Under the pieces are notes generated by a model that was given only the letters and a program-made list of their open reading frames with translations, searched no databases and was not told the DNA's origin. A stretch of 64,000 nucleotides of DNA from NCBI GenBank assembly GCA_026770705.1, contig JANJGN010000189.1, positions 1-64,000 of the forward strand, in the 5' to 3' direction. Shown piece by piece: positions 40,472 through 52,214 of the stretch (positions are counted from its first letter, which is position 1; every line of letters starts with the position of its first letter). This DNA is from Isurus oxyrinchus (taxonomy: Eukaryota). A program made the position numbers and the translations under genes.

Positions 40472-40522
40472 TCATTGCACTCTGTCTGCTGATGGGAGTC
40501 CGCTTGGAAATTGCTGTTTGTG
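40472..40522 (-). CDS. Gene D putative terminal exon (short tail HKQQFPSGLPSADRVQ* if phase 0)
   Basis: Acceptor ttctttccatcag; downstream sequence is homologous to the 3'UTR of tail A. The upstream donor and phase are uncertain. Confidence 0.4.
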   Translation of the reverse strand, partial: HKQQFPSGLPSADRVQ

Positions 40523-40534
40523 CTGATGGAAAGA

Positions 40535-41150
40535 ATAAGCTTTTCATAAATCGAGGGACTGAGTACAAACACAGGGAGGTTATGCTGAACATGTATAAAG
40601 CTCTGGTTAGGTCACAACTAGAGTATTGTGTCCAGTTCTGGTCTCCTCACTTTGGGAAGGAAGTGATGGTCCTTGAGAGGGTGGGGAGGAGATTGAGCAG
40701 AATGGGTCCAGGGATGAGGGATTTTAGCTACAGGGTTGGGTTGGAGAAGCTGGGGTTGTTCTCCTTGGAGCAAAGGAGATTGAGGGGGGATCTGATCGAG
40801 GTGTACAAGATGATGATGGGTTTAGATACGGTAGACAAAGAGAAGCTGTTGCCATTAGCTGATGGTACAAGGACTGGGGGACACAGATTGAAGGTTTTGG
40901 GCAGAGGGGGATGTGAGGAGGAACTTTTTTACACAGCGAGTGGTAATGAGCTGGAACTCGCTGCCTACGAGGATGGTGGAAGTTGAGACGATGAACGATA
41001 TCAAATGGAAATTGGATGGATACTTGAGGGGAAATAAACTTGCAGAGATATGGGGATAGAGCGGGGAAATGGGACTGACTGGATTGCTCTACAGAGAGGC
41101 AGCATGGACTCAATGGGCTGAATGGGCTCCCACTGTGCTGGAATGCCTCT
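40535..41150 (+). mobile_element. CR1 ORF2 C-terminus and 3'UTR
   Basis: YKALVRSQLEYCVQFWSP...LFSLEQRRLRGDLIEVYK. Confidence 0.93.
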
Positions 41151-41261
41151 CTGATACGAAGGTGATTCTAACCAGGACACTGACCAGTTTCTTTACTATT
41201 TAACCCAACATCACACGTTATTTGTCCGCACTGACTGACCAGATTGTTGCTGTACAAAGCT

Positions 41262-41401
41262 TCAAACAGTCTGTCGACTTCCTGTCACTGTTTGTCTCTC
41301 CCAGACACAGACTCCAGCGATAGTGATAACCACAGCCACAAGGAATATCACAGCTCGTATTCCCAGGATCAGGATCACGTGCAGAATCTCTCCTCCACTG
41401 T
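41262..41401 (-). CDS. Gene D transmembrane exon with intramembrane Arg (activating-type)
   Basis: Acceptor tgtgttctctag, phase 1. Encodes SGGEILHVILILGIRAVIFLVAVVITIAGVCVWERQTVTGSRQTV*; not shown in the ORF track. Confidence 0.8.
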
Positions 41402-42520
41402 CTAGAGAACACACAGAAAGAAATCATCACTGACTCTCCGCTTTCAATCTCTCACTCTGGCTGAACAATCAAGCTTCATATCACTGCAACATTTGCTGTA
41501 ATATTGACCCATCCACTGGGATTCAATGTGGAATGAATGTTTTCATTGTAAACACTCTAAGAGTGGACAATCGGAACTTTCCCCTTAGCGTGGAACATTG
41601 GTGAGAATGGATCATTGTGCTGTTGGACTCCCTGTCCAATGTTTCTCTCCATCGCTGTGTACAGGATTGTGCTGTAGAAAATTCTGGAAACGTTTAGTGC
41701 AGGGTGGAAATCCATCTCGGATGCGTGTGCGAATCGGGCAGGATCGAGATGGACTCCCTCACGGACTTACAACCCCGCTTAATAAACAATTCCAATCTTT
41801 ACCCAGAGAGAGGGGAGAATGTGGAACTCGTTCCCACAGGGAGTGGTTGAGGTGAATAGTAGCAAATTAGGAAGGGAAATTGCTTGAAAAGCTGGGAGAT
41901 GCAAGGGTTAAGTGCTACCGTGCCACCACTGGTGGCAGAGTGTAACTACAGCGTGACGTTTACATAGGCAATCCCCATTATGAACATGGACATTGGACAT
42001 CATGTGAAAAATGGGCACTGGAAAGCTGAGAACATGATGTAAGCTTTTCACCAACAGGAATTCCCTTCCTAAACCTCTCCACCTCTCTCTTACTCTCAGA
42101 TACTCAAACAAAATTTCACACAAAATCACGTAAGAGGAGTTGGGACAGGTGACTGGTCAAAGGATTAGGTTTCAGGAAACTTCTTAAAGGAGGATAGTGA
42201 GTTGGAGAGGCAGAGTGTATCTGTGAGTATCCCTGTGCATCTGAGTGTCTGTAATAGACCTTGCAATTTCCATATTCTTCCATAAATATGAAAGGGAACA
42301 CAAAACCCAGAATCTAGGTCAATACTCTGGTGCAGCACTGAGGGAGGTCAGGTAACCCACAGGGCAGTATGTGATAGGGTGTTTGTTTGTGAGTGTGTCT
42401 TTGTGTGTGCTCATACATTTGGGATTGTGTGTCTGCAGGTGTCTGCTTAGGTCTGTATATTAGTGTGTATTTGTGTAGTGTTTGAACCTGAGAGTGATGT
42501 TGAAGTCTGTGCACACTCAC

Positions 42521-50500: not shown

Positions 50501-50570
50501 CCAGAAGGTTAAATCCACACTTTAGAGAGTCAAATATTCAACAGTTCCATACACTTATGTAATTGTCAAT
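47501..50570 (+). mobile_element. Degraded Gypsy internal region (PBS, protease, integrase)
   Basis: tggtgatcagcgg PBS-like site, KIDTGASANI protease motif and integrase-like IHTVKSLILK..HLRSTP; many stops. Confidence 0.8.
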
Positions 50571-51582
50571 AAATATGAACATGATATGAGAAACCGCTTG
50601 TTCCCTGCCCTTCTGAAAGATCCATTCCTGCAGCAGGAGCCTGAAGAGTTACTGATAAGAGATTTAATTTATCGGATTGTAGAATGATCCAGAACTGAAG
50701 GAAGCCATTTGGCCCATCGAGCCTGTGCTGCGCCTTTGAAAGATCTGTCCAATTCGTCCCACTCTCACCTCTGCTCTCTCCCCCACAGCCCTGCAAAATG
50801 TCCCCTTCAAGTATTTATCCAGTTCCCCTTCTGAAAGTTCCTGTTGAATCTGCTTCCACCGGCCTTTCAGGCAGTGAGTCAATGGTCTCTCTCTGAACTG
50901 CAAAGTGATAAGTTTCAATGAAATATAAACTCTGCAGCAGATCAGAAACAATCATGATAACTCGGAATATTTGACAGTTTTACACACAGACAGCTTTGCC
51001 TCCCTTCTCTCTATCAGTTATCTTGCTCCCTTATTGAAGTATCTAGCATGGTGAGAAGGGACAGGAAGTGTGACGCTGAACAGCCTGTCTAATCTAAGAG
51101 CTTCTGTGTTGTCTTCATGGGAAGTTCTGATGAAAATCAGCAAGAGAGAAAAATTTCAGGGCATTGATATCGGAGTGCTTGCATCAGGATAGACTTCATC
51201 CCCCCAGTTTTTATCCCTGCTTCTCTATTCAGCCGATTGCTCCCCTGTCACTCGCTGACCTACGCTGGCTCCCAGTCCAGCAATGACTCAATTTTCAAAA
51301 TCTCTTCATTGATTCCTTATCCCTCCATCCTCCCTCTCTAATCCCTATCACTGTCACCTCCTCCAGCCCTGAAACCCTTTGAGGTCTCTGCTGTCCTGCA
51401 GTTCTGCTGTCAGACAGGGAGTCAGTGTATATCAGTGAGCACAGGGGTGATGGGTGAATGGGACTTGGTGTGAGTTTGTACACTGGCTCACTGCTGAATC
51501 AGTTCCCTATCAGAGCTCAGTAAGAATGTTCTTTTACAAAGACTATTAGCCATAAGTCTGTCCAAGCTGACGATGATATTAC

Positions 51583-51622
51583 CTTGGAGAAGTGACAGGA
51601 GGAAGTAAGATTTCCCGATCAT
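51583..51622 (-). CDS. Gene D signal-peptide exon
   Basis: MIGKSYFLLSLLQ with intact phase-1 donor. Confidence 0.85.
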
Positions 51623-52072
51623 TGTCCACTCCCAGATATTCCTTTAGCTTCTGACTCTTAAACTCTGAAAGAGAAAGGAGTTAATGAGACCTCACCTCTT
51701 GTCCGACAGCTCTCGAGAGATCAGAACTGCTTTTAGACAATGTCTTCACAGACTAATTTGGTTCTCTGTGGGATGATAGGTGCTCTGCAGAGAGTGAAAA
51801 AGCTTTAAAAAAATAAATCAATGAAGGACTTGCATTTCTATAGCACCTTTCACCACCTCAGGATGTCCCAAAGCTCATACCCCTGATATTCCCTCATCCT
51901 TTGAGCTAGAAAGATGTTCTGTACAACAGAACTGAGCCTCACACCCTGATCTCAATGATCAGTAGAAATCTTTCAAAGGCATCAATCATTGGAATCTGTC
52001 TTTATAAAGTCACAACATCAATAAAGGATGGTGTTGGTCGTGGAAGTGAATTCCAATCGTTCCGTTACTTAC

Positions 52073-52214
52073 CCAGGACCTGGCCGACTGCTCGCCTGGG
52101 GAGGAACTGCCCACACGCTCTGCTTGGGCTGAATGACCTCTTCCTGTGCTGCTCCCTCTGTGTGTTTAAATAGAAATGGTTGATGTGTCACTGTGAGACA
52201 AAATGAGGAAGTGG
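52073..52214 (-). promoter_or_regulatory. Gene D putative exon 1 and promoter with PU.1-like site AAAATGAGGAAGTGG (UTR exon 2 at 51696-51765)
   Basis: Paralogous to the 30221 block; gtaagt donor. Confidence 0.6.

What the first reader, a model, noticed from the sequence alone, without database searches (positions are those of the whole stretch)
40472..52214. Hidden Arg-containing TM exon: candidate activating Siglec paired with ITIM/ITSM gene A
Seen: at 41401-41262 a phase-1 exon absent from the ORF track encodes ILHVILILGI-R-AVIFLVAVVITIAGVCVW, then either a 12-aa read-through tail or a short Tyr-free spliced tail. Gene D's leader, V and C2 exons are open, and its C2 differs from gene A at only a few residues. 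Established: activating Siglec-14, -15 and -16 use a TM Arg or Lys to recruit DAP12, and Siglec-5/14 and 11/16 are paired receptors homogenised by gene conversion. Inference: this is an independently evolved paired inhibitory/activating Siglec system in a probable cartilaginous fish.
Basis: partly seen in the sequence, partly recalled or inferred. Interest (0 to 1): 0.88.

Follow-up and report, generated by a model that had tools for sequence, protein, structure and literature searches.

The report
Shark Siglec-like receptor with transmembrane arginine
The exon is real and spliced: it closes a two-domain Siglec-like receptor gene of a shark with a membrane anchor holding a conserved arginine and a 12-residue tail, the usual build of an activating immune receptor, and automatic annotation already shows it in other sharks.

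Summary
Window 41401-41262 (minus strand) is a phase-1 terminal exon. It encodes a 30-residue hydrophobic anchor with one arginine (CGA, 41357-41355) and a 12-residue tyrosine-free tail.

- **Splicing:** contigs from three runs (two studies, two coded organisms) join it by a GT..AG intron to the first C2 exon (42997). A fourth run joins it to the relic of the second C2 exon (42521).
- **Tail:** contigs run through the stop into the 3'UTR. The read-through tail is therefore supported and a spliced tail is not.
- **Conservation:** the same terminal exon closes 25 RefSeq models from five shark species in three orders. The arginine is present in 26 of 26 sequences, none has a tyrosine, and the exon is always C-terminal.
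- **Gene model:** leader, V, C2, TM. The V and C2 exons carry Siglec hallmarks.

The activating-receptor reading is well supported by sequence, but adaptor binding is untested.

The claim of a pair with gene A holds only in part. C2 and the V framework are nearly identical between the two genes. A 120-base block covering the specificity loops is only 55-60% identical.

The exon is a new, unannotated member of a family that automatic annotation already shows. I found no paper describing it.

The parts
51583..51622 (-). Leader exon of gene D. It encodes MIGKSYFLLSLLQ plus the first base of the next codon; the donor is G|GTAATA.
   Evidence: conserved copies lie upstream of gene A (29771) and gene B (32944); sequence and junction codon GTT; the same 13-residue leader opens Carcharodon RefSeq models. 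The splice to the V exon was not tested with reads.
45385..51582 (-). Intron 1, about 6.2 kb. It is inflated by inserted repeats, including ORFs at about 47.8-50.3 kb that I read by eye as retroelement-type. The same intron in gene A is about 0.9 kb.
   Evidence: homology 50965-52212 to 29093-30360; plus-strand ORFs that I read by eye as integrase and Gag-like (no family search was run on them).
45016..45384 (-). V-set exon (369 bases, phase 1-1). It has three cysteines and the FFRIEF arginine motif.
   Evidence: coordinates. V-set 3.6e-11 and Ig_CD22 1.3e-07, both above the curated cut-off; best solved relatives are sialoadhesin, MAG, Siglec-5, Siglec-8 and CD33.
45201..45320 (-). Hypervariable block inside the V exon. 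It is 55-60% identical between paralogues D, A and C, against 90-100% on either side.
42997..43293 (-). First C2-set exon (297 bases, phase 1-1). Its donor is joined to the TM exon in RNA-type contigs.
   Evidence: C2-set_2 3.3e-09; contigs 43013-43294 with one mismatch, and the joint at 42997.
42521..42656 (-). Relic of the second C2 exon, 3' half only. The first cysteine is missing, there are stops upstream, and no phase-1 acceptor exists. The donor at 42521 is still usable.
   Evidence: I-set profile positions 51-90 only; joint 41401/42521 in X6.
41262..41401 (-). Terminal coding exon: stalk, a 30-residue hydrophobic anchor with Arg, a 12-residue tail and the stop (41264-41262).
41355..41357 (-). 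CGA codon of the transmembrane arginine, the 10th of the 30 anchor residues.
   Evidence: invariant in 26 of 26 homologous exons.
41068..41261 (-). 3'UTR, as far as the contigs show. It runs into a repeat.
   Evidence: records 21 and 28, and a loose end at 41136.
40157..40325 (-). Relic homologous (80%) to the 3'UTR that follows the ITIM/ITSM terminal exon of gene A (10054-10225). The coding part of that exon is absent here.

Best explanation
Gene D encodes a type I membrane protein of about 281 residues: a 13-residue leader, a Siglec-type V domain, one C2 domain, a short stalk, a membrane anchor with a buried arginine and a 12-residue tail without tyrosine.

**Shown**
- The exons are open and in phase.
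- The C2 exon is spliced directly to the anchor exon, skipping the broken second C2 exon.
- The transcript ends by read-through of that exon.
- The anchor exon, with ILGIRA invariant, is a conserved terminal module in many Siglec-like genes of lamniform, carcharhiniform and orectolobiform sharks.

**Inferred**
- The arginine pairs inside the membrane with the aspartate of a small signalling adaptor (DAP12, DAP10 or FcR-gamma type).
- The protein therefore signals activation when its V domain binds a sialylated ligand.
- It sits beside paralogues that carry ITIM/ITSM tails, such as gene A.
- Because the specificity loops of D and A differ, D is better seen as one activating member of a diversifying cluster than as the mirror image of gene A.
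For: - **Splice joints:** GT..AG ends in four runs from three studies and two coded organisms.
- **Conservation:** the same exon closes 25 RefSeq models from five shark species. Arg is present in 26/26, no sequence has Tyr, and the exon is always C-terminal.
- **Matching models:** Carcharodon models of 281 residues have the same leader-V-C2-TM build.
- **Siglec features:** V-set, Ig_CD22 and C2-set_2 above Pfam cut-offs. The arginine of FFRIEF aligns with that of sialoadhesin NFRFE.
- **Family context:** most close relatives with an uncharged anchor carry 90-120-residue tails with ITIM-like motifs. The family therefore has both signalling types.
- **Depth in the membrane:** the Arg is the 10th of 30 hydrophobic residues. 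To my recollection this resembles the position of the basic residue in DAP12-coupled receptors. That is knowledge, not a test.
Against: - No adaptor was examined, and no binding or signalling was tested.
- The splice from leader to V was not tested, and no single contig links V, C2 and TM.
- Three of the four joint-bearing contigs have only 28-31 letters on the shorter side. That stretch does not cleanly tell gene D's C2 exon from those of its paralogues.
- One run (X6) carries a copy with a one-base deletion at 41372, which would shift the frame before the arginine.
- Invariant anchor positions do not cluster on one helical face.
- An older survey found no FcR-gamma in sharks (PMC4016189).
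Confidence: 0.68

Rival explanations
1. The protein is made, but it is a non-signalling decoy or modulator. It would compete with the inhibitory paralogues for ligand. The arginine would serve another purpose, such as retention, turnover or pairing with a receptor that is not an ITAM adaptor.
For: The tail is only 12 residues, with no known motif. No adaptor was shown. Conservation is a contiguous block, not a helical face.
Against: A charged residue kept invariant in the middle of an anchor across three shark orders is, in every well-studied immune receptor family, an adaptor contact. This argument rests on established knowledge, not on a test here.
Confidence: 0.15
2. In this genome, gene D is a decaying, transcribed copy. 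The family is functional, but this member is on its way to being a pseudogene.
For: - The second C2 exon is broken.
- Intron 1 is swollen to 6.2 kb by repeats.
- Neighbours C and B are broken: C has an in-frame stop in V, and B has a truncated C2.
- X6 shows a frameshifted copy joined through the relic exon with retained upstream sequence.
- The window's own protein was not found in the protein collection.
Against: - All four coding exons are open, with canonical splice sites and matching phases.
- The productive C2-to-TM joint is seen in three runs.
- Carcharodon models have exactly this two-domain build.
Confidence: 0.12
3. One reading: D and A are a matched pair with the same ligand site, kept alike by gene conversion, as with Siglec-5 and Siglec-14.
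For: The C2 domains are 95/98 identical. The 3' part of the V exon has dS 0.02 against 0.42 in the 5' part, a mosaic that fits conversion. The two genes lie in the same cluster.
Against: The specificity block 45320-45201 is 55-60% identical, and the V domains differ at 32 of 122 residues. The introns between the exons are much less alike than the exons.
Confidence: 0.2

Closest known systems
RefSeq models of great white shark Siglec-like genes, e.g. XP_041037236.1 and XP_041037232.1 (281 aa), and XP_041037190.1 (270 aa)
   Same: Same leader, same V-C2-TM build, same junction codon (Asp). The TM exon is 40-42 of 45 residues identical and C2 is 93-96 of 98.
   Different: The V domain is only 72-84% identical, and no model is identical to gene D. 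These are other paralogues or another species. They are automatic predictions, named after human Siglecs by similarity, and have not been studied.
Human Siglec-14 and Siglec-16 (activating partners of Siglec-5 and Siglec-11)
   Same: A Siglec-type V domain with the essential arginine, a basic residue in the anchor, a short tail, and a location beside ITIM-bearing paralogues. Parts of the ectodomain are kept nearly identical to a neighbour.
   Different: In the human pairs the ligand-binding domain itself is homogenised. Here the specificity loops are the most divergent part. The anchor exon has no detectable DNA relation to that of the inhibitory neighbour. Homology of the shark anchor exon to the mammalian ones was not shown.
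Siglec-15
   Same: A two-domain (V plus C2) Siglec with a basic residue in the anchor. It is reported as conserved from fish to mammals (PMC7226832).
   Different: The gene D V domain matches Siglec-15 more weakly (E 2.4e-06) than it matches sialoadhesin, MAG, Siglec-5, Siglec-8 and CD33 (1e-11 to 1e-08). From my own knowledge, Siglec-15 has lysine and a longer tail. Gene D is not an orthologue.
Paired activating and inhibitory Ig-type receptor families of fishes, such as teleost NITR and LITR and skate MDIR (from my own knowledge, not checked here)
   Same: Multigene clusters that mix ITIM tails with charged-anchor, short-tail members.
   Different: Those families have other ectodomains. None is of Siglec type.

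Membership tests
Siglec (I-type lectin) family | N-terminal V-set domain with the conserved arginine in the F-strand motif (F/Y-F-R-x-E) | tested here: met
   FFRIEF is present. The Arg aligns with that of sialoadhesin NFRFE. V-set and Ig_CD22 score above the Pfam cut-offs.
Siglec (I-type lectin) family | Three cysteines in the V domain and three in the adjoining C2 domain (intrasheet and interdomain disulfides) | tested here: met
   The sequence shows GSCVQIPC plus GDCSLI in V, and VSCTFNTTC plus LSCRV in C2-1. The disulfide pattern itself is inferred.
Siglec (I-type lectin) family | Binds sialic acid | not testable with these tools
   Needs a glycan array or a binding assay.
CD33-related Siglec subgroup | Orthology or clade membership with mammalian CD33-related genes, rather than CD22, MAG or sialoadhesin | tested here: inconclusive
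   Solved-structure hits to sialoadhesin, MAG, Siglec-5, Siglec-8 and CD33 are all within 1e-11 to 1e-08. No tree was built. The ITIM plus ITSM tail of the neighbours is like that of CD33-related Siglecs.
Adaptor-coupled activating receptors (Siglec-14/15/16 type) | Basic residue inside the membrane anchor | tested here: met
   Arg is the 10th of 30 uncharged residues.
Adaptor-coupled activating receptors (Siglec-14/15/16 type) | Basic residue conserved among homologues | tested here: met
   26 of 26 sequences, 15 distinct peptides, six species in three shark orders.
Adaptor-coupled activating receptors (Siglec-14/15/16 type) | Short cytoplasmic tail without tyrosine motifs | tested here: met
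   The tail is 12 residues, ERQTVTGSRQTV. No homologue has a Tyr.
Adaptor-coupled activating receptors (Siglec-14/15/16 type) | Physical and functional dependence on DAP12, DAP10 or FcR-gamma | not testable with these tools
   No shark adaptor sequence could be obtained by reference, so no complex prediction was run.
Gene-conversion pairs (Siglec-5/14 type) | Ligand-binding domain nearly identical between the activating and inhibitory partner | tested here: not met
   The V domains are 90/122 identical. The block 45320-45201 is 55-60% identical. Only C2-1 (95/98) and the V framework are nearly identical.

The most novel reading that the evidence does not exclude
The TM-arginine exon is an old, portable 'activating cassette' of galeomorph sharks. 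It closes Siglec-like V-C2 genes, multi-domain Siglec-like genes and, in bamboo and epaulette sharks, receptors in which only C2-type domains score as full matches. Together with the ITIM/ITSM paralogues, it would mean that a CD33-like Siglec system with both signalling types, coupled to adaptors, exists in cartilaginous fish. The published view is that fish genomes lack CD33-related Siglecs, and an older survey found no FcR-gamma in sharks.
Probability: 0.45. Interest if true: 0.6.

Novelty: new member of a known kind. Interest (0 to 1): 0.45.

Why it matters
Work on teleosts states that fish genomes lack CD33-related Siglecs (PMC7226832). I found no paper on shark Siglecs in the library. This window and the related RefSeq models show that sharks have large clusters of Siglec-like genes with both ITIM/ITSM tails and a conserved charged-anchor module.

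If the arginine does recruit an ITAM adaptor, two readings are possible. Either the two-sided (activating and inhibitory) logic of sialic-acid sensing goes back to cartilaginous fish, or it arose there on its own. In either case sharks would have to possess the matching adaptor.

The finding gives a concrete exon, a residue to mutate and a set of orthologues for that test. It is not a new principle: receptor clusters that mix activating and inhibitory members are common in vertebrate immunity.

Tried and rejected
- **Spliced Tyr-free tail:** no joint leaves the TM exon, contigs run through the stop, and all 25 homologues end in the read-through tail. Rejected.
- **DNA paralogue of the TM exon in the window:** none was found even at word size 7 and E 10. 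The exon is not a mutated copy of gene A's TM exon. Whether gene A has its own copy cannot be told, because an assembly gap (21953-22324) lies just where it would sit. The gap was left as it is.
- **In-frame use of the second C2 relic:** the only acceptors after the last stop are phase 2. Rejected.
- **Helical-face clustering of invariant anchor positions:** none (resultant 0.06, p about 0.94).
- **The window's own protein:** not found in the protein collection by three region searches. The searches are limited by length and shared words, so this is not proof that it is unannotated.
- **Literature:** no paper on shark Siglecs, or on DAP12 in cartilaginous fish beyond PMC4016189, was found in the library.
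- **Joined protein:** Every search used single exons by reference or database proteins.
- **Complex prediction:** none was run, because no adaptor sequence was available by reference.
- **Read evidence limits:** only Logan contigs were available. Strand, transcript ends and expression levels therefore could not be read.
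Full report
**The locus**

The window holds a minus-strand cluster of Siglec-like genes.
- **Gene A** has a V exon (28838-28470), a first C2 exon (27158-26862) and a second C2 exon (about 22624-22327, followed at once by an assembly gap). It has an uncharged TM exon near 21833 and four tandem tail cassettes of about 3 kb. Their last exons carry ITIM-like and ITSM-like motifs (LFYANI, TEYTQI and similar).
- **Genes B and C** are broken. B has a truncated C2 exon. C has an in-frame stop in V.
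- **Gene D** is the subject of this finding.

**Is the exon there, and is it more than chance?**

At 41401-41262 (minus strand) a polypyrimidine tract and AG are followed by two bases that complete a phase-1 codon. An open frame then encodes a short stalk and 30 uncharged residues interrupted by one arginine (CGA, 41357-41355). Twelve further residues and a stop follow.

I scanned all three minus-strand frames of the window for stop-free 21-residue stretches with mean hydropathy above 2.3. Outside low-complexity DNA, only this exon and gene A's TM exon came up.

**Is it spliced to Ig exons?**

I laid Logan contigs of four runs on 40300-46250. The runs were X1 and X2 (coded organism A, one study) and X5 and X6 (organism B, two other studies).
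- X1, X2 and X5 each hold a contig that joins 42997 to 41401. It skips 1595 bases whose ends are GT..AG on the minus strand.
- The shorter side of these contigs is 31, 28 and 28 letters. That stretch differs from the paralogues at only one or two bases.
- X6 holds a 674-base contig that joins 42521, the donor of the second C2 relic, to 41401, with more than 250 letters on each side. It also retains sequence upstream of the relic and lacks one base at 41372. It is 4-5% diverged from the window. I read it as an unproductive or paralogous form in the other species.
- Joints with canonical intron ends show that these runs hold RNA, although their type is only guessed in the records.
- X2 has contigs with no mismatch over 310 and 134 bases. 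Organism A is therefore probably the window's species. This is an inference.
- Contigs cross the putative internal donor and the stop and run to about 41068. No joint leaves the exon. The 12-residue read-through tail is thus the form that is seen.

**The gene model**
- Leader 51622-51583 encodes MIGKSYFLLSLLQ. It is conserved upstream of genes A and B and identical to the leader of Carcharodon models.
- Intron 1 is 6.2 kb and swollen by repeats.
- The exons are V 45384-45016, C2-1 43293-42997 and TM 41401-41262.
- All junctions are phase 1. The junction codons are GTT, GAT and GAC. The product would be about 281 residues.
- The second C2 exon survives only as its 3' half. Pfam I-set matches positions 51-90 only. 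There are stops upstream, and the only acceptors after the last stop are phase 2. It must be skipped, which is what X1, X2 and X5 show.
All searches were made exon by exon, by reference.

**What family?**
- The V exon scores above the Pfam cut-offs for V-set and Ig_CD22. C2-1 scores for C2-set_2.
- Against solved structures, the best matches are sialoadhesin, MAG, Siglec-5, Siglec-8, CD33, Siglec-10 and Siglec-7. The arginine of FFRIEF aligns with the arginine of sialoadhesin's NFRFE motif, which I know as its sialic-acid-binding residue.
- The cysteine pattern (three in V, three in C2) is the Siglec one.
- Whether the cluster belongs with the CD33-related genes or is a separate expansion was not resolved.

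**Is the arginine conserved?**

A search of 1.84 billion representative proteins with the V exon gave 1111 relatives. Among the best 150, three ended in a peptide homologous to the gene D exon. Region searches and cluster look-ups added more.

In all, 25 RefSeq models carry the exon. They come from Carcharodon carcharias, Scyliorhinus canicula, S. torazame, Chiloscyllium punctatum and Hemiscyllium ocellatum.
- The exon is always at the C-terminus, always without tyrosine, and always with the arginine.
- Aligned with gene D there are 26 sequences and 15 distinct peptides. The invariant pattern is ..GE.L.V..ILGIRA.IF.V.V..T.A..CV.E.
- Two Carcharodon models of 281 residues have exactly the leader-V-C2-TM build of gene D.
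- In bamboo and epaulette sharks the same exon also closes proteins with many Ig domains. One of them has only C2-type domains as full Pfam matches.
- Most close relatives with an uncharged anchor have tails of 90-120 residues with ITIM-like motifs.

**Relation to gene A**
- C2-1 differs at 3 of 98 residues.
- The V domains are 90/122 identical, and the divergence is not spread evenly. Codons 55-122 have dS 0.02. Codons 1-54 have dS 0.42.
- A sliding comparison puts nearly all the change in 45320-45201. There, all three pairs of paralogues are only 48-80% identical (D against A 55-58%).
- The intron between V and C2-1 is much less alike than the exons.
- This mosaic fits gene conversion or strong constraint on the framework, with diversification of the loops that, to my knowledge, set specificity in known Siglecs. 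It does not fit a matched pair that shares one ligand site.
- The TM exon has no DNA relative in the window.
- About 940 bases downstream of its stop lies a 170-base relic of the 3'UTR that follows gene A's first ITIM/ITSM exon. Gene D's region therefore once held, or was copied with, the end of an inhibitory gene.

**How it most likely works**

Shown: a spliced mRNA for a two-domain Siglec-like membrane protein with a conserved buried arginine and no signalling motif of its own.

Inferred from the well-known rule for immune receptors of this build (Siglec-14, -15, -16, KIR2DS, TREM and others): the arginine pairs with the membrane aspartate of an ITAM or YxxM adaptor, and ligand binding then activates the cell.
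- I put this at about two in three.
- Which adaptor cannot be told. The depth of the arginine (10th of 30) is, to my recollection, closer to DAP12- and DAP10-coupled receptors than to FcR-gamma-coupled ones.
- The scan has unchecked notes of FcR-gamma-like genes elsewhere in this genome.
- A 2014 survey found no FcR-gamma in sharks (PMC4016189).

**Novelty**

The principle is known, and the exon is already in automatic annotation of five other sharks. Gene D itself was not found in the protein collection.

The library holds no paper on shark Siglecs. A study of teleosts states that fish genomes lack CD33-related Siglecs (PMC7226832).

I rate gene D a new member of a known kind. It is of moderate interest to comparative immunology and glycobiology.

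**Limits**
- Only contigs could be laid, once.
- No adaptor sequence was available, so no complex was predicted.

Noticed in passing
window 21760-21860 (minus strand): Gene A's TM exon reads WTVGLFTAGIMLSVLLAEIFIFICV, with a glutamate in mid-membrane. The basking shark and catshark relatives have glycine at that place (FLVGIFIFI, FLAGILIF).
   Followed up: no
window 21953-22324: An assembly gap lies directly after gene A's second C2 exon. That is the place where a counterpart of gene D's TM-arginine exon would be expected. Whether gene A has an alternative activating terminal exon cannot be told. The gap was left untouched.
   Followed up: no
window 36579-36581 (minus strand): Gene C's V exon has an in-frame stop (GDTP*EVTAQE), so gene C looks like a pseudogene. 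Gene B's C2-1 exon (31939-31716) loses homology after about 224 bases.
   Followed up: partly
window 45201-45320, 28655-28774 and the matching part of gene C: A hypervariable block of about 120 bases lies inside otherwise nearly identical V exons. It is 48-80% identical across the three pairs (D against A 55-58%), against 90-100% around it. It covers the B-C to C' region.
   Followed up: partly
P0159 (XP_060679410.1, Hemiscyllium ocellatum), P0157 and P0158 (Chiloscyllium punctatum): The same TM-arginine terminal exon closes proteins with many Ig domains. In P0159, the only one of the three that I scanned, only C2-type domains give full Pfam matches; P0157 and P0158 carry a V-set entry in the precomputed Pfam lists. 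The exon therefore seems to be a module shared between receptor types.
   Followed up: partly
window 41372, run X6: A contig of the second coded organism lacks one base inside the TM exon, upstream of the arginine codon. It is joined through the relic C2 exon. This is a frameshifted allele, a paralogue or an orthologue.
   Followed up: no
window 1-6900: About 6.9 kb of C-rich, T-rich low-complexity repeat (GC skew -0.97) reads as one 1925-codon Pro/Ser/Leu/His frame. It is not a gene by any sign I saw.
   Followed up: no
window 58050-58138: A further fragment of the second C2 exon, 88% identical to 42497-42586, lies beside microsatellite DNA and an assembly gap.
   Followed up: no
P0161 (XP_041037213.1, Carcharodon carcharias): A close relative ends in DDLYANCDFAKDSVYENL. 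This is the YxN-type tail that the scan also noted at 54247-56811 of this window.
   Followed up: no
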